Shown here piece by piece: positions 41,654 through 57,087 of a DNA stretch of 64,000 nucleotides; position 1 is the first letter of the stretch, and each line of letters begins with the position of its first letter. The notes under the pieces are model-generated. The model was given only the letters and a program-made list of their open reading frames with translations, had not been told where the DNA came from and did not search any database. The stretch is from the NCBI GenBank assembly GCA_048013815.1, contig CM106585.1, forward strand, positions 21,390,001 through 21,454,000, written 5' to 3'. The DNA comes from Setoptus koraiensis. Taxonomy: Eukaryota; Animalia; Arthropoda. The position numbers and the translations under genes were made by a program.

Positions 41654-44600
41654 TCATTCTTCTAACATTAGATCTTCCTCTATTTCTTCGTCACTTTGAG
41701 GTGCTGGATCCGAATTCTCGACAGTATCTTCTTCCTCAGCACTTTTATTCTTTTCTGAATTGTCGCCCGGCAGCACCTCTATCATAGTCGATTGAAACTC
41801 ATCGAATGTGCGTTTTCTAGAATGATCATGGACTCGCTCCGCTATGTCGACCTGATGTCTAAATTTAGTATATTGGCTCTTCAGAACCTTACTCTTAACG
41901 CTTAATCTATCAATGATGGATTCCAGTTCTGATAATGCATTCTCTAGGTCATCGAGAGATTCGGAGTTCGCCTTCTTAATATCGAAAGAGGCGAATGAAT
42001 ATATCAAGAAGCCGCAAAGATCATTGCAAGTGTCGGTTTGATGTCTACTCAATTCTCTGATTCTTCTAGCAACACTAATAGCGATAGGAACATGACACAC
42101 CACTGGTATCAGACTACACATAAACCTTATCATACAGTAAATATCTGATGCAACCATTATATTGTATCCTTCCTCTAGGATGTAAGCATGAAGACTTTCT
42201 ACTCCAATTAGGAATGTCTTCTCCAGTAGACTGTAAAGATTAGCTTCAGATTCACGTGATCTTCCGGTCAAATCTTCAACAAGAATAGGTAAGAATACCC
42301 CTATGTATTGTTTAACTCGTGAATGTGTTCTAGGATGGTACCACCATAGTATGAGATCAGCCAGTATCTCGGGGGACGACAACTTCTCAAAATAGAAGAG
42401 CTTGGAGACTCCTTCAGTAAGCGCTTTTAAATATTCTAATGTGGATATATTGTTATCTTTAGGATTAAATTGTCCATATTTCTTCAATGGCCCTCTGAAG
42501 AGGTTGTACAATTCGGATTCTTGCACCTCTACATCTCTATGTTGTATCACTACGTCAACTAAACTGCGATAACTTCGAGTTTTTACTTCAATCATCGGAT
42601 CTTTACAGCCGCCAACAAGTAATGCCAATGTACCTGCTTGTAGGGCATAGTTCTTATCTGTTAAAGCAGCCAAACCCGTGCAACGTATAACGAGACTCTT
42701 GATTGTAGGATCATTAGTCCATTCCATACCTTCCAGAGATAATAATGTAAGATGAGCACTCATTGTAGTCGGGACTTCCTTGAGATCACAATACTCGAAA
42801 CAAGCCGCAAACATCTGCAAACACTTGAGCAATTCAGATCGGTGATGCTTGAAGATTTGAATTTCCTCAGAACCGAAGTCTATACTGAGGAGATGGGCAG
42901 CTGAACTTCGGGCACTTGCATTGTAACCAATATCAGGGAAAGCTATCAGCGACTGGCGTTTGTCATTTAGCAGTTTGATGTTTGTCTTCAGTTCTTCTAT
43001 CTTCTTGCGAACACTTTCGTCAAAGTCTGGGTCTTCATTGTACTTTTCCTCGGCATCTCTAAGGTCTACTTTACTCTGAGCGATCTCATTCTCTATAACA
43101 ACATCTAATGGCAAAGTTTGAGAATTTGAGACTCTCCTAGGTTTGAAGGGAGTGCTCGATTTAGCTATCTCTTGGGTGCTTCTTCGACATCTATCTGTGA
43201 GATCCTCCAAGTTAGATCTAACCTCCATGATCATGTCGGAGACCAGGCTGACCAAAAGATTTGGGCTGGTTTTGTATATCAGCTTAGATAAGCATCTCAC
43301 TATGGGAGTGATGAAATCATTGAATGCTCCAGTCAAGAGATTTTCCTTCAGCATCATACGAAATACTTCCTGAGTATTTTTACGCTCTAATTCGTCAACT
43401 ACTTCATAGGTTTCAATGAATTGCATCAGTTGTTGGTATACGAATTCTAGTTTAGCAACTGATCTGTTTTCTCGTTGTTGTTCAATTTTTTTATGGGAGC
43501 GCTGGACGAATTCTTTGATATAGTCGGCTAAAGTAACAAGGTCTGGGCACAACCTTTCGTATAGATCTATCTCCTCCTCCTGGGGAATTACATTGTCATC
43601 TATTAACTTCTCAATACTAGTATCGGCGTCAACATGTGGAACTAGTTTTAGTAGTGGAATGGACGCAGAGTTTTTTTTGCAGAAACGCAGTAATGTCATC
43701 CAAACGAACACAGACTTTTCATCCAGACGATCGAAATGAGGCAATCTTGTTTGAGCATTTAGTAGGTTTTGTCTGAGCATTTCAACGTTTGAATGTAATC
43801 TCGTAGTTCCATTCGTTTGGATATTCTCCAAGTCTTCCATATAGATCAGGTCAACAAGTCTTTGCATATCATCTAGATAATTAACAACATCAAAGGATTG
43901 AATTAGTTTGATGAGGTCAACACGATCATACAACTCCTTGGTCCACAAATCCAAAGTGCGACTGCGGAATATATATGCCAGATGACGACATCTCTCATTC
44001 AACCCGTTATGAATAACACGGTGGCGCTCCTCTAGCGTTAGATCCGAGGGATTGATCAGGCCCAAACGATTGTACGCAACTTTTCTTATAGACTCATTGG
44101 AGTCACGAGTGGAATCAATCAAAAATCCGTGTTTGAAGACTTTAGTATCCATAACTTGTATGAGGGCTTTACGCACAATAGGCTCCGGATCGCGTTCAAA
44201 ATGATGAATAAATGCCTCGCGAATTAATCTACAATCCTGAAATGTTTTAGAGGCAAGTACAGCATGTGCACGAATGATAGATTTTTTGTCTCTCATTCTT
44301 TTGCCCAGACTTGTTTGAAGTACCTCGCAGATACCCTGGTCCAAAGAGGCCACTGATGAGAGCACCTTAGCGATCAATATGACAGCATTACATCGGCAAT
44401 TATCATTCACTGACTGCATGTAATGATTGATGACATCTAGAACAACAGCACTAATAAGTCTATCATGATTTGTGACCTCGTATAATTCTAACTGAGACTG
44501 TTGAGAACCATTTACGGATGATAAGACATCGCACAATTCATCATCGATTGGAATTTGTTGTTTTCTTTTGTTGGCATTTCGTTTAGGATTGTATGTTCGT

Positions 44601-45001
44601 CCACCTCTCGCGGATCTTCGTCGGGTTTGTTTTTCCTGTTGTTTTGCCACAACTGTTTCATCGTTTTCCGGTGCATCAGACGATGGGGCAGCTGATTTTA
44701 TTTGCGAAATATATTCTAAGAAAGTGCAAACAAATTCACAGGCAGTGTTAAAGAATACCTTGTTGGCCGGCGCCGATTGTAGAAGATTCCTCAGGCAATG
44801 TTTAAATGATGTGATAAATTCATTATAGTCGGTGTTCCTATAGAGCTTCTTGAGTTCCGTTAGCGACGAGTCGGTCGATGTAACATGTTGTCCACTATTG
44901 AATATGTTGACAATGGCAGCGTGGCAATTGCTGTTGTTGACAGTTCTCTCGCCTAGTGGACCCAAGGAAACGTTTGTTGACATATTTGTGGCAGTCGGCA
45001 T
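41654..45001 (-). CDS. NCAPG: Condensin I HEAT subunit CAP-G (Cnd3/Ycg1), intronless, about 1115 aa from the first ATG
   Basis: HEAT motifs RMRDKKSIIRAHAV, RDPEPIVRKAL, TRDSNESIRKVAY and GLNER match CAP-G. The C-terminal Cnd3-like region contains EGVSKL and LILWWYHP...KQYIGVFLP. The ORF track starts at a TTG (45055); the first ATG is at 45001. Confidence 0.92.
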   Translation of the reverse strand: MPTATNMSTNVSLGPLGERTVNNSNCHAAIVNIFNSGQHVTSTDSSLTELKKLYRNTDYNEFITSFKHCLRNLLQSAPANKVFFNTACEFVCTFLEYISQIKSAAPSSDAPENDETVVAKQQEKQTRRRSARGGRTYNPKRNANKRKQQIPIDDELCDVLSSVNGSQQSQLELYEVTNHDRLISAVVLDVINHYMQSVNDNCRCNAVILIAKVLSSVASLDQGICEVLQTSLGKRMRDKKSIIRAHAVLASKTFQDCRLIREAFIHHFERDPEPIVRKALIQVMDTKVFKHGFLIDSTRDSNESIRKVAYNRLGLINPSDLTLEERHRVIHNGLNERCRHLAYIFRSRTLDLWTKELYDRVDLIKLIQSFDVVNYLDDMQRLVDLIYMEDLENIQTNGTTRLHSNVEMLRQNLLNAQTRLPHFDRLDEKSVFVWMTLLRFCKKNSASIPLLKLVPHVDADTSIEKLIDDNVIPQEEEIDLYERLCPDLVTLADYIKEFVQRSHKKIEQQRENRSVAKLEFVYQQLMQFIETYEVVDELERKNTQEVFRMMLKENLLTGAFNDFITPIVRCLSKLIYKTSPNLLVSLVSDMIMEVRSNLEDLTDRCRRSTQEIAKSSTPFKPRRVSNSQTLPLDVVIENEIAQSKVDLRDAEEKYNEDPDFDESVRKKIEELKTNIKLLNDKRQSLIAFPDIGYNASARSSAAHLLSIDFGSEEIQIFKHHRSELLKCLQMFAACFEYCDLKEVPTTMSAHLTLLSLEGMEWTNDPTIKSLVIRCTGLAALTDKNYALQAGTLALLVGGCKDPMIEVKTRSYRSLVDVVIQHRDVEVQESELYNLFRGPLKKYGQFNPKDNNISTLEYLKALTEGVSKLFYFEKLSSPEILADLILWWYHPRTHSRVKQYIGVFLPILVEDLTGRSRESEANLYSLLEKTFLIGVESLHAYILEEGYNIMVASDIYCMIRFMCSLIPVVCHVPIAISVARRIRELSRHQTDTCNDLCGFLIYSFASFDIKKANSESLDDLENALSELESIIDRLSVKSKVLKSQYTKFRHQVDIAERVHDHSRKRTFDEFQSTMIEVLPGDNSEKNKSAEEEDTVENSDPAPQSDEEIEEDLMLEE

Positions 45002-46683
45002 ATTGCAAGCAATAAAATGATTTCTATTGATATGGATGTTGATTGAATGTAGCAATTGGATTATAAGCCGCCAGTGTGATAAATAAAAGTTGTAATGATA
45101 ATGAGCAACGTCCGTCTATCGGGGCGGCATACGGCCATGTAAATGGGTGGCAAAAATAAAATTTCCAATTAGATGCTGATGTTAGGCTAATTTCTAGTAG
45201 GGGATATTTTTCTCATAATAGATTGGGATATTAGTGACGAAATGCCTGCGAAGGGGAGTGATATAGTTGTTGGTCGCGTTACTGCTATACAGTAAAATAT
45301 GTGCCAGTAGTGCAGCAGTTCTGTTACTGTGATGTTTGTGTTGTGCTGTTGTTGTGTGCGCACAACAAAATCAATTGCAGCGGCACAAAGTGAACGCAGC
45401 AACAGTTCGTCTGTTTTTCCCCTCTTTTCATTGTGCCTCTAACAAGTTGTTTGTTGTAGTTGTGCTCGGGGGAAAAAGCATCGACTACGTGCAACCGGCG
45501 TTGCTAGCAACGAAATGGAAATGCACGGCTCAACACACTTGGCAAAAGATGCAAGCAACACAAACGAGCACATGGTTTGGCGCGTAAAACCCATAAACAA
45601 AGATTGAAAAAATAGTGCGCTGACTGACATTGATCTGTGCATTGGCCACTCGCACTGATTACTGACAACTAACACACCATCTCATTCGACGCTAATCGTC
45701 GGGGGTGGTGTTTTTAGATCGTAGTTGTTGGTTCCAATCGGACCGACAGAGAATTCACACACACTCGATAATTGTTATTGCGCCGACAGTGAGTCTCCCT
45801 CTGCACGCCGCTCACCGTCGTTGCCTATGTCGTTGAACGCCGATTAACGGCCGACAACGCTGACCATTGGCGGTGTTGAATGGTCATATTAAATTACCCA
45901 ACTCAAGCAATTACAATAACGAATAGTAGTAACTCATCAAGGAAATCAATGTCTTTTGTACAATCGAGTCCCGACAATCACGGCGATGGCCAAAAAATAT
46001 CTCGAGCCATCAGACATCCTGTGGCCGATTAGTCAGTCTCAACTGTGACTTTGTCCATCTCGAACCGCAAATTGGATAAACACACGGAACGAGCTCACAA
46101 TATGATTCATCTTTAAGTATGTTTATAATTTGTATAATTATAGGGACGTTGTAATAACAGCAACAGACACACTATCGACCCACCATCAATATTACCTATA
46201 TCCAGCCTCGTTGTGCCTCCATTGTTGCTAAATTTGACATGAGGCAGGCACACAACAACTACGATACTGAACTGCATTTGAAACAAACATGTTGTTGCGT
46301 TTTTTATCCAGGCTATGAATCATCGCGCACACATACAAACGCACACGCACAATCGCAGACAGACACACTAATACATGTACACTATCGTTGGAGTAGATAA
46401 ATGGCATTAAAACAACTAAAATCAAACAGTGAATACCTTAAACATATTACATTATTTTTATTTTCCACATCAGGATGACAGACTCAGGGAAACAATATCA
46501 GAAACGAGGGATATAGTGGAAAAATAGTGCACGCTGGCCGCGCTCCTACAACCACGCTGTCGAAAAGGATAAATTTTCTATGATGCTGGCTGCTTTACAA
46601 AGTAAAAGAAATCATTTTCTTGCAACAACAAACTCAAAGTTCAACTGTCATAATCCAAGTCCAGTACAAACCCCAGACCCGAA

Positions 46684-49026
46684 ATGAGAGTATTAAGAAA
46701 ATATATTGTTTCTGATTGTATATTATTCTTGTTTATACTGTCACTGCAAATACCGAAAATTCATAATCAATTGTCATCAATTACAGCGACAAACCCATTA
46801 ATACCAGCCAACAATGACAATATTCACAATGATCCCACACTTGCTGTGCCCACCACTCAAGCCACCATGGTGAGCAAACCAGACAAAATTCATCCATACA
46901 AGACTATTGACAAGCAAAAGCCCATAATCGTTCAATATCAATTTGACAACGGACTAGACTGTAATGGTGCCTATCTCAAGCTCATGAAGTCCAACGATCA
47001 ATTCTCAGCATCGTCATCATCAAGCAACACAGACAATTCAAAACATCAACAGCCTTATTCTGTAATGTTTGGTGTGGACAAATGTGGACTAGATGCCAAG
47101 TTACACTTTGTCATGCAGTATTTAAATCCTAAGACCAATCAAATTGAGGAGAAGCACTGGAAATCAGCACAGCACATCGGTCTAATGGAACCAACAGAAA
47201 TAGATCGATATGAGGGGGCACTCGTCCAACAGCCCAATCCCACAACTTCCTTGTTTGATCCCTCTAAACTTTTACCCGGAGATAACAATGAAAACGGTAT
47301 ATCTCTCCAAGACGCCAACCCTGGAGGAGTGTGTCCCATCTCGCCTATCATGCACCTTCCGGCGCCTTCTGATTCATCTAGAACTGATAGTAAAAGTTAT
47401 TATCAGCAACAATTCCTTCCCAACATTGAGTCCAATTCATTCCCCAATATATTGAGTGCTATGCGCTACTACTTTAAGGAAGTGGCAGCTTTATGCATTA
47501 TAACTGGCCTCATCATGAATTATGCACTAGCATTAATTAAATGGAGAATTAGCCGCAGCATGGAAAGCTCTCAAAATGGTCCACCAAACGAATCAAACTT
47601 GAGATCAACCAGGAATTCTCTTCCTTTTGGTCCTATACTGCATGACGATGGAACAATACAGATTGGCAAGATCGCTTTCAACCCGAAGTTACAACTAGGC
47701 CATGGGTGTCGAGGAACTGGTGTCTTCAAAGGAACTTTCGAATCTAAACAGGTTTGTGCCGTTAAAAGAGTTCTATCTCAATATGTAACACTAGCAGGTA
47801 GGGAAATAGAATTTTTGCGGTCTTTACAGAACCCCAACTTAGTTCGATATCTAGCAACTGAAGAAGACGCCCAGTTCATCTATATAGCTCTGGAACTAGC
47901 GGAGTTAACTCTCGATGATTTGATTGAAGGTACCAAAGCTTGTACTCTCAAGAATATAGGAATAGCCAGAGAGGAGCTTTGTCGACAAGCCGCAAATGGT
48001 CTTAGTTATCTGCATGGGATGAACATCGTTCACCGTGATATCAAACCTCAGAATATTCTAATATCGTTCCCACTGCGTCCGGATAATGAACGGAAAATCA
48101 TGATCTCCGATTTTGGCGTGAGTAAACAGTTGGCAAGTATCGATTCTCCTTGTACTTCTAGCGTAAGTCGTTGTCTGGATGGTACTCAAGGTTGGATTGC
48201 ACCAGAAATCTTGAAAGCCGAGCTGGACAAAAGTAAAAAATCAAGGCCCTCCAAATCAGCGGATATATTTTCACTCGGGTGTGTGTTCTGGTTTATATAT
48301 AGTGATGGTGGACACCCTTACGGAGATCCATTCGACCGCCAAACAAATATTTTAAAAGGTGATTTCAAGCTTGATACATCCGACAAATTTTCTCAGGAGC
48401 ATGAAGCACTAGCTGGAATTTTCGAACCTCTAGTTAGATCAATGATAGACCCAAAAATGTCCAAAAGACCGCCTATCGAGGCAGTTTTGTCATATCCGCT
48501 TTTCTGGAGGAAATCGCGACAACTGCAGTTTTTGCTTGACGTCTCGGATCGAATTGATAAAGAGCAAAATTGCTTTTTAGTTCGTAGAATAAATTTGCAA
48601 TTTATAGTTGATGGAGATTGGCATGCCAAGCTCGAGCCAGATGTTATTGAAGATCTAAGCAGAAGTAGATCATACAATAAAAAGTTAGTATGCCATCTAC
48701 TGCGTGCTATCAGGAACAAGAAAAATCACTATTACGAACTACCACCGAACATCAAAGGAATACTCGGTGATATACCAGATCAATATATAGATTATTTCAC
48801 ATGCAAATTCCCAAAGCTCTTACCACACGTTTACATAGCCACTCAGCCGGCAAGTCATGAAAGTGTTTTCAAACCCTACTATTCAGCCGTGCATAGATTT
48901 TCATCACAAGAGGAAATCGAATCCAGATCGCAATCGAATAGAACATCTAATTGCTTAGATAGTGTGGATATTAATTATTTTGAGTGGCCTGACTTGGACA
49001 CACCGCCATGGCGAAAGTTAAATTAA
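46684..49026 (+). CDS. IRE1: IRE1-type Ser/Thr kinase-endoribonuclease with a non-canonical, calnexin-derived lumenal region (780 aa, intronless)
   Basis: Signal-like CILFLFILSL; TM VAALCIITGLIMNYALALI (47482-47538). Kinase motifs LGHGCRGT, AVKR, HRDIKPQN, ISDFG, GTQGWIAPE and DIFSLGC. KEN domain motifs QLQFLLDVSDRIDKE and LLRAIRNKKNHYYEL...FTCKFPKLL. Confidence 0.95.
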   Translation: MRVLRKYIVSDCILFLFILSLQIPKIHNQLSSITATNPLIPANNDNIHNDPTLAVPTTQATMVSKPDKIHPYKTIDKQKPIIVQYQFDNGLDCNGAYLKLMKSNDQFSASSSSSNTDNSKHQQPYSVMFGVDKCGLDAKLHFVMQYLNPKTNQIEEKHWKSAQHIGLMEPTEIDRYEGALVQQPNPTTSLFDPSKLLPGDNNENGISLQDANPGGVCPISPIMHLPAPSDSSRTDSKSYYQQQFLPNIESNSFPNILSAMRYYFKEVAALCIITGLIMNYALALIKWRISRSMESSQNGPPNESNLRSTRNSLPFGPILHDDGTIQIGKIAFNPKLQLGHGCRGTGVFKGTFESKQVCAVKRVLSQYVTLAGREIEFLRSLQNPNLVRYLATEEDAQFIYIALELAELTLDDLIEGTKACTLKNIGIAREELCRQAANGLSYLHGMNIVHRDIKPQNILISFPLRPDNERKIMISDFGVSKQLASIDSPCTSSVSRCLDGTQGWIAPEILKAELDKSKKSRPSKSADIFSLGCVFWFIYSDGGHPYGDPFDRQTNILKGDFKLDTSDKFSQEHEALAGIFEPLVRSMIDPKMSKRPPIEAVLSYPLFWRKSRQLQFLLDVSDRIDKEQNCFLVRRINLQFIVDGDWHAKLEPDVIEDLSRSRSYNKKLVCHLLRAIRNKKNHYYELPPNIKGILGDIPDQYIDYFTCKFPKLLPHVYIATQPASHESVFKPYYSAVHRFSSQEEIESRSQSNRTSNCLDSVDINYFEWPDLDTPPWRKLN
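46891..47163 (+). other. Calnexin/calreticulin-family lectin-domain fragment within the IRE1 ORF (aa ~70-160)
   Basis: KPIIVQYQFDNGLDCNGAYLKLM...PYSVMFGVDKCGLDAKLHFVMQYLNPKTNQIEEKHWK aligns with calnexin [25 protein letters not shown]...[37 protein letters not shown]. Confidence 0.93.
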
Positions 49027-49337: not shown

Positions 49338-49979
49338 CTAAACAAAACTAGCAAACTTATTATAATGGTGGAGTGGCTTTAAATTGAAGTGTTTCTTCAT
49401 GAAATTAATCATAGCATTAGAAGGCCTATCAATGAGGAGATCTTTGGGTTGTGAATTCAAATCTTTGCTGGCAGACATCATAAGTTTCAGGCCTGTGCCT
49501 TCTCTCCTTTCTACTACGAAAAAGTCCATGACACATAAGCAATTCTCGTACTCTTCCAGTTGATCCATTCCACTGAGGAATAGATTTTTCTTGCATATTC
49601 TAATGTAACCTTTTGGAGTAGATTGTTGATTGATTGAGAAGTACAGATATTCCGAATCTTGGTTTTGCATCAACTTTGCATATGTGGTTATGGAAGATTT
49701 GAGTTTTTGGGCCTGAGCCGATTGCTGGCCTAGATGATCGATGTGAGCGGCCAAACTACTTTTGACACTCTCAATCAATTGATTCCAATCGAATTCGGCT
49801 TTATGGGACTGTTTTCGATGTGCTGTCGAGTCACAATCAACACGGAAAAGTTCGCAGCCATGGAGACATAGAACAATTTCTTCCTCATTTATGTTTGTAG
49901 ATTTGTCTGAAGAAGGTACGCTGTTGTCGATGGTAGCTACTAACAATGGCGACGGTGGAGCAGTCTTTTGTTTTTCCAT
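49338..49979 (-). CDS. ATAT1: Alpha-tubulin N-acetyltransferase (MEC-17 family), divergent; 5' end uncertain
   Basis: IDHLGQQSAQAQKL..IT, GYIRICKKNLF, LCVMDFFV and IDRPSNAMINFMKKHFNL match alphaTAT1 motifs. The frame stays open for more than 50 codons upstream of the ATG. Confidence 0.88.
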   Translation of the reverse strand: MEKQKTAPPSPLLVATIDNSVPSSDKSTNINEEEIVLCLHGCELFRVDCDSTAHRKQSHKAEFDWNQLIESVKSSLAAHIDHLGQQSAQAQKLKSSITTYAKLMQNQDSEYLYFSINQQSTPKGYIRICKKNLFLSGMDQLEEYENCLCVMDFFVVERREGTGLKLMMSASKDLNSQPKDLLIDRPSNAMINFMKKHFNLKPLHHYNKFASFV

Positions 49980-55249: not shown

Positions 55250-57087
55250 TTAGTCTGTATCAAACACTATTTCATCCGGGTCCGGCGCTCTGGGTAAAAA
55301 TTCCTCTCCTGGAAACATTGTTTGAAACAGATTTTTAGCCTGAAATTTATGGAATCGCGAAGAACATATTCATTAGTTAGGAATGTCCATTAGTTGTGAA
55401 AGTTTGATTGTGAGGCTTGATCACTAACCTCATCTATTGCACTGTCGTAGTCAGTATCGGATGTGCCCAAAGAGGTAACATAAAGTCCATTTTTATGTTG
55501 GTCAGGAATGTTGATCACATCATGCTGAGTAAGTTGATTGTAGTAACAACTCCACAAAACACAATCGCCCTTGTCTTTGTATAGCCTTTCAACTATTGGC
55601 ATTAAATCTTTGGTAGCATTGCACTCGTGAGATCGGGTCCATAAATAAACTATACTCAACCCTGTTGGACAAACCATGACAGAAGAATTGACTTCTAACA
55701 AGGAAATAGTGTATCTGTTCGACATTGTGTCAGCTGCGAATCTGGAGAATATTATTGCCTGTTGTTCATCTCGGTCGTTCTCATGAAAGCTCCTCGTGGT
55801 TATAATTATGGCTCGAGATTCCATATCTTTGCTGGCACCTAAAACTTTGGCAGATAAGGCATAAGAATAGTTAAGAACTACCTTGGCGCATCTAACTGTT
55901 CTATCCTCATCTAATTTTACAATTATCCGATCCTCCAGAGAGTCCCCCTTCTCGCTATCAGAGGTTATTTGCACGTTCTCTGCTTGTCTATCGAGACAGT
56001 AAACTCCACCAAATACGGCACACATTCGACAAAAAGACTGAGGAAATTCTCCACAGCCATACATTGGAAACAAAAATGGAGATTTACCAAATCTTTCAAC
56101 TGACGATAGAAATTTCTTGATGTTCAAACACGTCGTGAGTGTGGACGTGTTTGGATCTACCATGCCAATAGAATTTATGAGTATGTGGCGCAAATTACTT
56201 GTCAGATCACGCTCAATGAGACATTTTTCTATATCCATTTGAAGGTAATCATTGAGTTCGGATTGTTCAGGTTGGTCTTGATTAAAATTTATGCACAATT
56301 CGAGGAACTTCATTAGGCGCCGTTTGTCTATAAGATTGGGTAGTATTTGACTAGAGAAGACTTCGTTTCTCTTACAAGGTAACACCTGAAATCGACCCTC
56401 GATTAAGCTGACCAAACGGACTATATTCTTGAATTCGTGGTAACGTGCCACGTTAGATTTCACAAGAAGGTCCACCATCGCCCCATTGCTGTAGATCAGC
56501 CTGGGCGCCAGGTCCAAACAGAATAGCTTTGATTTCTCTCTCAGCCTTTCAACCGTCCATTTGTCCTCTACAGCCGCTGGCTCTTGGACGGTCTCTAGAA
56601 CTGGCTCTTGGACAGGCTCTTGGACAGGCTCTTGGACAGGCTCTTGGACAGGCTCTTGGACGGGCTCTTGGACAGGTTCCTGGGCAGGCTCCTGGGCAGG
56701 CTCCTGGGCAGGCTCCTGGGCAGGCCCCTGGACTAGTTCTTGACCAGCTGTTTGTCCGTCGCCGTGATGGATAACAACATTTACATTGGAGAAAATAGGA
56801 TCCCGTTTGGCCATTCTTTTCATGCAAAACGTCGTTTGTCGTTGATTGTTTGTACCGGTAGAGTCTGTGGCGATATTTGGCTGGTCTGTGGTGTCGTCTT
56901 GCTGCTGATATTGGGTCCATCTGACGAGTTGGTCGAAGCTGAAAGATGCCCATTGGTCTCCGTAATAGTCATTGTGATCCAGATGTAACACGGACTTCCC
57001 CACTCTGGCACAAGCGGCGGCCAGGATAGAATTTATGAGGCCCGTCCCGAAGAAGACACAATCGACCCTCTCAGGTAAGTCAGCCAT
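55250..57087 (-). CDS. CHM: Rab escort protein (Rab GGTase component A; GDI/REP family); exons 57087-55429 and 55339-55250; 582 aa
   Basis: N-terminal DCVFFGTGLINSILAAACARVGKSVLHLDHNDYYG, plus FCLDLAPRL, YHEFKN, SPFLFPMYGCGEFPQSFCRMCAVFGGVYCL. An 89-nt GT-AG intron joins to the REP-type tail AKNLFQTMFPGEEFLPRAPDPDEIVFDTD*. Confidence 0.93.
56578..56731 (-). repeat. In-frame 12-bp coding repeat giving about 13 QEP(A/V) units inside REP
   Basis: QGPAQEPAQEPAQEPAQEPVQEPVQEPVQEPVQEPVQEPVQEPVLETVQEPA. Confidence 0.95.

What the first reader, a model, noticed from the sequence alone, without database searches (positions are those of the whole stretch)
46684..49026. Calnexin-IRE1 chimera: the UPR sensor domain is replaced by a chaperone-lectin fragment
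Seen in sequence: one uninterrupted ORF encodes a signal-like peptide, about 90 aa clearly homologous to the calnexin globular domain, a P/S/Q-rich linker, one TM helix, and an IRE1 kinase plus KEN RNase. No canonical IRE1 lumenal motif (e.g. STLDG...AV...G...KW) is visible, and the lumenal part is only about 240 aa. Established: IRE1 normally uses a conserved lumenal core that binds unfolded proteins and BiP, whereas calnexin binds monoglucosylated N-glycans. Inference: a gene fusion that could couple the calnexin glycoprotein-folding cycle, or a glycan ligand, directly to IRE1 RNase output (XBP1 splicing or RIDD). I do not know of a described example of this architecture.
Basis: partly seen in the sequence, partly recalled or inferred. 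Interest (0 to 1): 0.92.

Follow-up and report, generated by a model that had tools for sequence, protein, structure and literature searches.

The report
Mite IRE1 with calnexin-derived sensor
A gall-mite gene for the cell's main protein-folding stress sensor (IRE1) has swapped its usual sensing domain for a conserved piece of the sugar-binding chaperone calnexin, a combination not described before.

Summary
ORF 46684-49026 (+) encodes one 780-aa protein. It has a signal-like N-terminus, a calnexin fragment (Pfam Calreticulin E 2e-20), one transmembrane helix, and an IRE1 kinase plus KEN RNase whose catalytic residues align with human IRE1. It has no canonical IRE1 lumenal core.

The gene is real and under selection. 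A second species (Logan contig L001) carries the same 782-aa architecture beside the same condensin gene. dN/dS is 0.075 in the calnexin core, equal to the kinase, at dS about 1. In 78 core codons there are 23 synonymous changes and no replacements.

Two refinements:
- The calnexin-derived part covers about aa 46-238, not 90 aa. The "linker" is a degenerate continuation that reaches the start of the P-domain.
- The host is an eriophyoid mite. All 28 other eriophyoid IRE1s found also lack the canonical sensor and carry an unrelated ~95-aa N-terminus.

The fragment keeps the disulfide and five of the six calnexin glucose-binding residues, but lacks about half of the lectin sandwich, Glu426 and the P-domain. 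Glycan sensing is therefore plausible but unproven. No RNA evidence was obtained. I could not settle whether this genome has a second IRE1. I found no published example of this architecture. The same scan noted the retained lectin residues on this window before.

The parts
46399..46576 (+). Conserved non-coding block upstream of the start codon (likely promoter or 5' UTR)
   Evidence: 74-82% identical to L001, against about 30-60% in the rest of the intergenic region. No ORF is conserved between the two species here.
46684..49026 (+). Whole ORF: 780-aa calnexin-IRE1 chimera, stop codon included
   Evidence: Ortholog P0001/L001 is 82% identical. Overall dN/dS is 0.118 at dS 0.80.
46684..46770 (+). 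Signal-peptide-like N-terminus (aa 1-29; basic start, hydrophobic core CILFLFILSL)
   Evidence: Kyte-Doolittle peak at aa 3-27. The start MRVL[RK]KYIV is conserved in L001. No signal-peptide predictor was available.
46819..47181 (+). Well-conserved calnexin lectin core (aa ~46-166), with Cys93/Cys134 and Tyr97, Lys99, Tyr125, Met128, Glu156
   Evidence: Pfam PF00262 E 2e-20. 1JHN E 8e-18. Foldseek best match 1JHN, E 9e-6. AF2 gives five strands at pLDDT 76-86. dN/dS 0.075; 78 codons carry 23 synonymous and 0 replacement differences. All nine columns that are invariant across 46 sequences are kept.
47182..47397 (+). Degenerate continuation of calnexin (aa 167-238), up to the start of the P-domain; contains the conserved unpaired Cys217
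   Evidence: BLASTP alignments with spider, oribatid and horseshoe-crab calnexins run to aa 235-247. MAFFT collinearity. dN/dS 0.15. AF2 pLDDT below 50.
47428..47553 (+). IRE1-heritage juxtamembrane amphipathic stretch (FPNILSAMRYYFKEV) and transmembrane helix (aa ~249-290)
   Evidence: This is the only lumenal or membrane part shared with the short-type eriophyoid IRE1s: hhalign 25 columns, 48% identity, E 1.4e-5. tblastn homology with P0003 starts at 47428. Hydropathy peak at aa 266-286 and helical moment. AF2 helix 256-297.
47689..48504 (+). Protein kinase domain (aa 336-607), with VCAVKR Lys, HRDIKPQN and DFG
   Evidence: Pfam E 1.2e-36. Alignment to human IRE1 5HGI, E 4e-98. dN/dS 0.074.
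48520..48882 (+). KEN / RNase domain (aa 613-733), with RSY...LLRAIRNKKNHY
   Evidence: Pfam PF06479 E 7e-34. Residues aligned to the human RNase motif RTY...LLRAMRNKKHHY are conserved. dN/dS 0.084.

Best explanation
This is a real, functional IRE1 gene of a deep-branching eriophyoid (gall or rust) mite lineage.

Shown:
- One ORF makes a type-I-like membrane protein. Its cytosolic half is an IRE1 kinase/RNase in which the catalytic motifs I checked against human IRE1 are conserved.
- Its lumenal half is not the canonical IRE1 sensor. It is a domesticated piece of the mite's own kind of calnexin, running from the N-lobe of the lectin domain to the first residues of the P-domain (about aa 46-238).
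- That piece is joined about 15 residues before an amphipathic juxtamembrane helix and a TM helix that are shared with all other eriophyoid IRE1s.
- A ~90-aa five-strand core of the calnexin piece is unchanged by selection between the two species. It keeps the lectin disulfide and 5 of the 6 glucose-binding residues.

Inferred:
- The output is ordinary IRE1 signalling: trans-autophosphorylation, then XBP1-type splicing or RIDD.
- The input comes from two routes. One is the conserved amphipathic helix plus TM, which would sense membrane stress, as in sensor-less IRE1 variants. The other is the calnexin-derived module, which binds a lumenal ligand or partner and so controls dimerisation or clustering.
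- My leading candidate ligand is the monoglucosylated N-glycan on unfolded glycoproteins (about 35%). A non-glycan partner or self-association is about equally likely.
- It is more likely this lineage's only IRE1 (about 60-65%) than an extra paralog.
For: Architecture:
- Domains and motifs.
- Second species with the same 782-aa architecture and the same Cnd3 neighbour.

Selection:
- dN/dS by segment: calnexin core 0.075, degenerate part 0.15, kinase 0.074, KEN 0.084, at dS 0.7-1.0.
- Zero replacements against 23 synonymous differences in 78 core codons, and 0 against 10 in aa 224-251.

The calnexin piece:
- Every column invariant across 44 calnexins is kept, including the sugar-site residues. 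Residue list from PMC10197109.
- AF2 core pLDDT 76-86, and Foldseek best match calnexin 1JHN.
- The nearest calnexin is that of the eriophyoid Fragariocoptes setiger.

Place among IRE1s:
- In the IRE1 tree the fusion pair sits inside a fully supported eriophyoid clade, sister to the 28 short-type IRE1s.
- Cnd3 shows the same 83% then about 40% identity pattern. The species lineage itself is therefore deep-branching.
- The juxtamembrane and TM homology is shared.
- Sensor-less IRE1 is functional in plants (IRE1C: PMC6788458, PMC6883098).
Against: - No transcript evidence. The two RNA-seq runs laid had no reads from this organism. The runs that hold the sequence are of unknown or only guessed ('RNA?') kind.
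- The lectin fold is incomplete. About 55-60 N-terminal residues of the sandwich, the C-terminal strands with Glu426, and the P-domain are missing. AF2 gives pLDDT below 50 for aa 168-254.
- AF2 was given a calnexin-rich alignment, which biases the core towards the calnexin fold.
- Only two species carry the fusion, so selection estimates rest on a single pairwise comparison.
- The rest of the genome could not be searched for a second IRE1. A low-depth contig with a short-type-like KEN stretch is present in runs X2 and X7.
Confidence: 0.8

Rival explanations
1. Glycan-gated IRE1. The calnexin module is still a lectin for monoglucosylated N-glycans. IRE1 clusters when UGGT-tagged unfolded glycoproteins exceed calnexin/calreticulin capacity.
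For: The disulfide and 5 of 6 sugar-binding residues are kept. These are among the only columns invariant across 46 sequences, despite a very long branch of 2.19 changes per site. The core has no replacement between the two species. An unchecked scan note places a likely calnexin gene elsewhere in the genome.
Against: Glu426 and about half of the beta-sandwich are absent. AF2 supports only five strands. No second sheet is evident to bury the hydrophobic face. No binding data exist.
Confidence: 0.33
2. Non-lectin scaffold. The half-sandwich and the conserved tail (Cys217, block 224-251) serve as a dimerisation surface or as a docking site for BiP, a PDI or calnexin-cycle partners. Stress is sensed mainly by the amphipathic helix and TM (lipid-bilayer stress) or through chaperone release.
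For: A lone beta-sheet with an exposed face is a natural self-association surface. An unpaired Cys217 is conserved in both species. The predicted-disordered block 224-251 is as conserved as the core. The amphipathic helix and TM are the only lumenal or membrane parts conserved across all eriophyoid IRE1s. Short-type relatives and plant IRE1C work without a canonical sensor.
Against: It does not explain why all the sugar-site residues in particular survive such a long divergence from calnexin.
Confidence: 0.4
3. Extra, specialised paralog. The genome also has a short-type IRE1, and this copy is a duplicate that captured a calnexin 5' part and does a side job, for example RIDD of particular mRNAs.
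For: The fusion pair is sister to all short-type IRE1s rather than nested among them. Short-type genes lie beside VPS13, whereas this one lies beside Cnd3. A short VPS13 is noted elsewhere in this genome (unchecked). A short-type-like KEN fragment occurs in runs X2 and X7.
Against: Single-copy Cnd3 shows the same deep split, 83% then about 40%, so no duplication is needed. Cnd3 neighbours differ in every lineage, so synteny is uninformative. The KEN fragment has depth 3.5 against 116 in X2, which fits a second organism. Root-to-tip lengths are similar in both clades.
Confidence: 0.35
4. Artefact or dead gene: a misassembled junction, a read-through of two genes, or a pseudogene.
For: There is no RNA evidence. 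Some of the contigs holding it may come from the source sample.
Against: A different species has the same continuous ORF. All indels are in frame, and dN/dS is 0.08-0.2 in every segment, the junction included. There is no stop and no alternative start except Met259, just before the TM. DNA conservation starts upstream of the ATG and ends at the stop.
Confidence: 0.03

Closest known systems
Canonical metazoan IRE1 (ERN1/ERN2; e.g. human IRE1alpha, PDB 5HGI cytosolic part)
   Same: Single-pass membrane layout. Kinase and KEN RNase align over 410 residues (E 4e-98). The catalytic Lys, HRD, DFG and the RNase Tyr/Arg/Asn/His motif are conserved.
   Different: It lacks the conserved core lumenal domain altogether: no Pfam PQQ-like hit, and hhalign probability 0.4%. 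A calnexin-derived segment stands in its place.
Short-type eriophyoid IRE1s (e.g. Aceria tosichella P0032; Logan P0002-P0026)
   Same: Same fully supported clade. 50-54% identical in the kinase and RNase. Same juxtamembrane motif FP[DN]ILSA..[HY]Y..EV and TM. They also lack the canonical sensor.
   Different: Their ~85-aa N-terminal part, with three conserved Cys and no signal-like stretch, shows no similarity to calnexin or to this protein's aa 1-248. Their genomic neighbour is different.
Calnexin (PDB 1JHN; nearest is Fragariocoptes setiger calnexin KAG9509658.1)
   Same: Aa ~46-238 are collinear with the calnexin N-lobe up to the start of the P-domain. The disulfide pair and Tyr165, Lys167, Tyr186, Met189 and Glu217 equivalents are kept.
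   Different: The first ~55-60 residues of the sandwich, the P-domain arm, the C-terminal lectin strands with Glu426, and calnexin's own TM and tail are all missing. Only Pfam profile positions 42-158 of 369 are matched.
Arabidopsis IRE1C (sensor-domain-less IRE1)
   Same: A natural IRE1 without the canonical unfolded-protein sensor that is still functional (PMC6788458, PMC6883098).
   Different: As those papers describe it, IRE1C lacks the sensor domain. Here a foreign, selected ~220-aa ectodomain is present instead. The lineage (plants) and the origin are independent.

Membership tests
IRE1 (kinase/endoribonuclease, ERN family) | Protein kinase domain with catalytic Lys, HRD and DFG | tested here: met
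   Pfam Pkinase E 1.2e-36. VCAVKR, HRDIKPQN and SDFG align to human IRE1.
IRE1 (kinase/endoribonuclease, ERN family) | C-terminal KEN/RNase domain with catalytic Tyr, Arg, Asn and His | tested here: met
   PF06479 E 7e-34 over profile 1-127/127. RSY...LLRAIRNKKNHY aligns to RTY...LLRAMRNKKHHY. It sits inside the mite IRE1 clade, not with RNase L.
IRE1 (kinase/endoribonuclease, ERN family) | Type I single-pass topology (lumenal N-terminus, cytosolic kinase) | tested here: met
   Only two hydrophobic segments, aa 3-27 and 266-286, with basic residues (KWRISRS) after the TM. This is in silico only.
IRE1 (kinase/endoribonuclease, ERN family) | Conserved core lumenal domain (unfolded-protein and BiP sensor) | tested here: not met
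   No PF13570 or PF13360 hit, although other mite IRE1s have them. hhalign against 20 canonical lumenal domains gives probability 0.4%.
IRE1 (kinase/endoribonuclease, ERN family) | Stress-induced splicing of XBP1/HAC1 mRNA or RIDD | not testable with these tools
   Needs an assay.
Calnexin/calreticulin lectin chaperones | Complete lectin beta-sandwich (Pfam PF00262, full length) | tested here: not met
   Only profile positions 42-158 of 369 are matched. A degenerate continuation reaches about position 225. AF2 models five confident strands.
Calnexin/calreticulin lectin chaperones | Six glucose-binding residues (Tyr165, Lys167, Tyr186, Met189, Glu217, Glu426) and the Cys161-Cys195 disulfide | tested here: inconclusive
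   Five of the six plus both Cys are present (Tyr97, Lys99, Tyr125, Met128, Glu156, Cys93, Cys134). The segment that carries Glu426 is absent.
Calnexin/calreticulin lectin chaperones | Proline-rich P-domain arm (ERp57 and cyclophilin B docking) | tested here: not met
   The alignment stops at the first PxNPxxEIxDPxDxKP-like stretch. No repeat motifs follow.
Sensor-less IRE1 (plant IRE1C type) | Lumenal sensor domain absent | tested here: not met
   About 235 lumenal residues are present and under purifying selection.

The most novel reading that the evidence does not exclude
A natural glycan-gated UPR sensor. The domesticated calnexin half-lectin still recognises monoglucosylated N-glycans, so the load of the calnexin/UGGT folding cycle is read directly by IRE1 without an unfolded-peptide groove or BiP. 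More broadly, a whole animal superfamily (Eriophyoidea) would run its IRE1 branch without the canonical lumenal sensor, with one lineage re-inventing a sensor from a chaperone.
Probability: 0.3. Interest if true: 0.9.

Novelty: new variant of a known kind. Interest (0 to 1): 0.74.

Why it matters
How IRE1 senses ER stress is still debated: direct peptide binding, BiP release, or membrane stress.

Here evolution has done a domain swap. The canonical sensor is gone in every eriophyoid IRE1 recovered. In one lineage it is replaced by a strongly selected fragment of a lectin chaperone that keeps its sugar-binding residues.

This gives a directly testable natural construct for two questions. Can IRE1 be driven by a different lumenal ligand? 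How much signalling depends on the amphipathic helix and TM alone? It is also a compact template (about 220 aa) for engineering ligand-specific IRE1 reporters.

If the module proves inert as a lectin, the case still shows that a half beta-sandwich can be kept under extreme constraint for another purpose.

Tried and rejected
- RNA evidence. Two polyA or oligo-dT runs labelled as organism C gave zero reads on the stretch, so this was no test. My single read-laying run is spent. Run lists only show partial word shares in runs of unknown or guessed ('RNA?') kind. X7 contigs lie only inside the ORF and about 220 nt after the stop. That looks RNA-like but proves nothing.
- More fusions. A word-indexed search of the lumenal part, an exhaustive HMMER search of 1.84 billion representatives and a JGI metagenome scan found only P0001. 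The one metagenome hit, L006, is an ordinary calnexin of an unrelated GC-rich eukaryote.
- Is the short-type N-terminus a further-decayed calnexin, or a remnant of the canonical sensor? hhalign and Pfam say no. A 19-column LxKLPF resemblance has probability 1.6% and I disregard it.
- Calnexin remnants next to short-type IRE1 genes, or a short-type N-terminal exon in the window: none by tblastn.
- An upstream coding exon or uORF: there is no conserved ORF, only a conserved non-coding block. I also saw no obvious upstream signal-peptide exon in a three-frame read upstream of the short-type genes.
- Ortholog or paralog, by synteny: Cnd3 neighbours differ in each lineage, so synteny says nothing. 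P0022, the deepest short-type, is from another sample. The window's own protein is not in the contig index. The scan's notes cannot be queried outside the window by coordinate.
- Atlas feature search of aa 1-290: the best score was 0.67, which is uninformative.
Full report
**1. Observation**

The window carries an uninterrupted 780-codon ORF at 46684-49026 on the + strand.

- Pfam finds Calreticulin PF00262 at aa 43-166 (profile positions 42-158 of 369, E 2e-20). It also finds Pkinase at aa 336-607 (E 1e-36) and the IRE1/RNase L nuclease domain PF06479 at aa 613-733 (E 7e-34).
- None of the PQQ-like families that mark the lumenal domain of other mite IRE1s (PF13570, PF13360) is hit.
- The N-terminal 279 aa match the crystal-structure sequence of calnexin 1JHN at E 8e-18.
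- Hydropathy shows just two hydrophobic stretches, aa ~3-27 and aa 266-286. Basic residues follow the second, which fits a type I membrane protein.
- The cytosolic half aligns to human IRE1 over 410 residues (E 4e-98). The catalytic Lys (VCAVKR), HRD, DFG and the RNase motif RSY...LLRAIRNKKNHY are conserved.

**2. Is it a real gene?**

The protein library holds one close relative, P0001: 782 aa, 82% identical, with the same Pfam set.

- P0001 lies on a 13-kb Logan contig from a different run (L001). The same condensin Cnd3 gene sits divergently upstream, and a different gene sits downstream.
- Codon-wise comparison gives dS 0.8 and dN/dS 0.118 overall. By segment, dN/dS is 0.075 in the calnexin core, 0.15 in the following 'linker', 0.15 around the TM, 0.074 in the kinase and 0.084 in the RNase.
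- All gaps are whole codons.
- In two blocks of the calnexin core (aa 71-103 and 122-166, 78 codons) there are 23 nucleotide differences, all synonymous. Block 224-251 has 10 synonymous differences and no replacement.
- DNA similarity between the species rises about 285 nt before the ATG and collapses about 40-130 nt after the stop codon (between 49069 and 49158). No conserved upstream ORF exists.
- A 13.4-kb contig in run X2 spans the locus. A 402-nt contig in run X7 crosses 47108-47508 without a difference. These may not be independent of the source, but L001 is.

Misassembly, pseudogene and two-gene read-through are therefore very unlikely.

Transcript evidence is missing. The two RNA-seq runs I could lay held no reads of this organism. 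The other holders are of unknown or guessed kind.

**3. What the lumenal part is**

- BLASTP against calnexins of a spider, an oribatid mite and a horseshoe crab runs on through the P/S/Q-rich 'linker' to aa 235-247. There GISLQDANPGGVCPISPIMHLPAPSDSSRTD lines up with GSLLEDxxP--PVNPxxEIDDPxDxKPED, the end of the lectin N-lobe and the first residues of the P-domain.
- Upstream, similarity starts near aa 46-52, which corresponds to about residue 100 of a full calnexin. About 55-60 residues of the sandwich's N-terminal strands have therefore been lost.
- Downstream, tblastn and hhalign show that from aa ~249 the protein is IRE1 heritage. The motif FPNILSAMRYYFKEV plus the TM matches FPDILSAISHYWFEV plus the TM of other eriophyoid IRE1s.
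- The best calnexin match is that of Fragariocoptes setiger, an eriophyoid. In a tree the fragment sits on a very long branch attached next to it, within the animal calnexins. The donor was most likely the mite's own calnexin lineage, although the resolution is weak.

In a 46-sequence alignment the nine invariant columns are Cys93, Gly95, Tyr97, Lys99, Met128, Gly130, Asp132, Cys134 and Glu156. By offset these are calnexin Cys161, Tyr165, Lys167, Met189, Cys195 and Glu217, and Tyr125 equals Tyr186. That is the disulfide plus five of the six residues listed as sugar-binding in PMC10197109, which cites Leach and Williams 2004. The sixth, Glu426, lies in the C-terminal lectin strands, which are absent.

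AlphaFold2 was given the calnexin alignment, which is a bias.

- It models five strands (aa 81-158) at pLDDT 76-86, and aa 168-254 below 50.
- It models one long helix at aa 256-297.
- Foldseek returns 1JHN first, at E 9e-6 over 118 columns.

There are no N-glycosylation sequons in the ectodomain. There is one conserved unpaired Cys217.

**4. Context: eriophyoid IRE1s**

The nearest other IRE1s are 25 clusters of 547-704 aa, 45-54% identical over the kinase and RNase. The named one is from Aceria tosichella.

- Their N-terminal part is only ~95 aa (consensus EPDFSKxFPKRFITMSMxDKYMAVCFIYDGxQYQNLCxEENPDGTFNYSEKCL...). It has no signal-like stretch and no Pfam hit.
- It shows no profile similarity to calnexin, to this protein's aa 1-248, or to the canonical lumenal core.
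- In a maximum-likelihood tree all 30 eriophyoid sequences form one clade (SH-aLRT 100). That clade is separate from spider-mite, oribatid and astigmatid IRE1s, most of which are longer and several of which carry the Pfam families of the canonical lumenal domain.
- Within that clade the fusion pair is sister to the 28 short-type sequences (SH-aLRT 94).

The canonical sensor therefore seems to have been lost on the eriophyoid stem. The calnexin piece is a feature of one deep lineage.

Other notes of this scan also call the genome eriophyoid. I treated that as a lead, and the Aceria and Fragariocoptes affinities found here agree with it.

**5. Only IRE1, or a paralog?**

- Short-type genes lie beside a ~1920-aa VPS13, whereas this one lies beside Cnd3. 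However, Cnd3's neighbours differ in every lineage examined, so synteny is uninformative.
- Cnd3 itself shows the same pattern as IRE1: 83% to the L001 species and 38-47% to all other eriophyoids, Aceria included. The species lineage is therefore deep-branching, and no duplication is needed to explain the IRE1 tree.
- A 327-nt contig in runs X2 and X7 encodes a short-type-like KEN stretch. Its depth is 3.5 against 116 for the locus in X2, which suggests another organism.

I put ortholog (sole IRE1) at about 60-65%. An unchecked scan note mentions a likely calnexin gene 20.9 Mb away and a short VPS13 4.5 Mb away.

**6. Mechanism**

Shown: the architecture, the conserved catalytic motifs, strong purifying selection on the calnexin core and the juxtamembrane region, and retention of the sugar-site residues.

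Inferred: the protein is an ER-membrane IRE1 whose RNase output is conventional. Its activation, meaning dimerisation or clustering, is controlled by the conserved amphipathic helix plus TM and by the calnexin-derived module.

What that module binds is open.

- For a glycan ligand: the residues that survive a very long divergence from calnexin are exactly the lectin-site residues.
- Against: the sixth residue and half of the sandwich are missing.
- A lone sheet with an exposed hydrophobic face, an unpaired conserved Cys and a fully conserved 'disordered' block fit a self-association or partner-docking role equally well.

I give glycan gating about one third, a non-lectin scaffold about 40%, and little weight to an inert spacer. 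The spacer idea conflicts with 0 replacements in 78 codons.

**7. Comparison and novelty**

The protein is an IRE1 by kinase, RNase, topology and phylogeny. It fails the lumenal-core criterion. It is not a calnexin, because it lacks a complete lectin domain, the P-domain and calnexin's own TM and tail.

Sensor-less IRE1 is known in plants (IRE1C: PMC6788458, PMC6883098). Here, by contrast, a foreign selected ectodomain replaces the sensor.

Full-text searches for IRE1 with calnexin, fusion and lumenal domain, and for IRE1 with eriophyoid, returned no description of such a protein. Searches of 5.8 and 1.84 billion proteins found it in only one other species.

I class it as a new variant of a known kind. 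Its interest is high for UPR mechanism. That interest is tempered by the lack of expression and binding data and by its narrow distribution.

Noticed in passing
L002:10001-11692, L003-L005, L009:8001-10115 (relatives, not the window): All 28 other eriophyoid IRE1s recovered are 'short-type'. They have a ~95-aa N-terminal part with three conserved Cys and no signal-like stretch. There is no similarity to the canonical lumenal core (hhalign probability 1.6%). In four loci from two clusters they lie beside a ~1920-aa VPS13. The canonical IRE1 sensor seems to be lost in the whole superfamily.
   Followed up: partly
window 46399-46576: A non-coding block 74-82% identical to the other species, just upstream of the IRE1 start codon. 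No conserved ORF lies in it. It is a likely promoter or 5' UTR element.
   Followed up: partly
window 47332-47334 (Cys217) and 47353-47436 (aa 224-251): A conserved unpaired lumenal cysteine, and a 28-aa block with 10 synonymous and 0 replacement differences, although AlphaFold rates the region as disordered. This could be a linear motif or a redox or dimerisation site.
   Followed up: partly
runs X2 and X7, contigs touching window 48526-48564: A 260-327-nt low-depth contig encodes a short-type-like KEN stretch (PFFWSKANQL...SHESKIVSRV). It is either a second eriophyoid species in both samples or a second IRE1 gene.
   Followed up: no
window 1-40000 versus 40000-62000: The first 40 kb are 45-61% GC (mostly 52-57%), with many short tandem repeats and few long ORFs. 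The gene-dense part with intron-free ORFs is 36-45% GC. The composition changes sharply near 39-40 kb.
   Followed up: no
window 55390-57087 (-), repeat at 56579-56733: The Rab escort protein / GDI-family ORF (565 aa) carries about 13 tandem (A/V)QEP units from a 12-nt repeat inside the coding region.
   Followed up: partly
window 41654-45055 (-) and 49338-49979 (-): The neighbours are condensin subunit Cnd3 (83% identical to the L001 species, only about 40% to other eriophyoids) and a Mec-17 alpha-tubulin acetyltransferase convergent with IRE1. In L001 the downstream gene is an RNase PH protein instead.
   Followed up: partly
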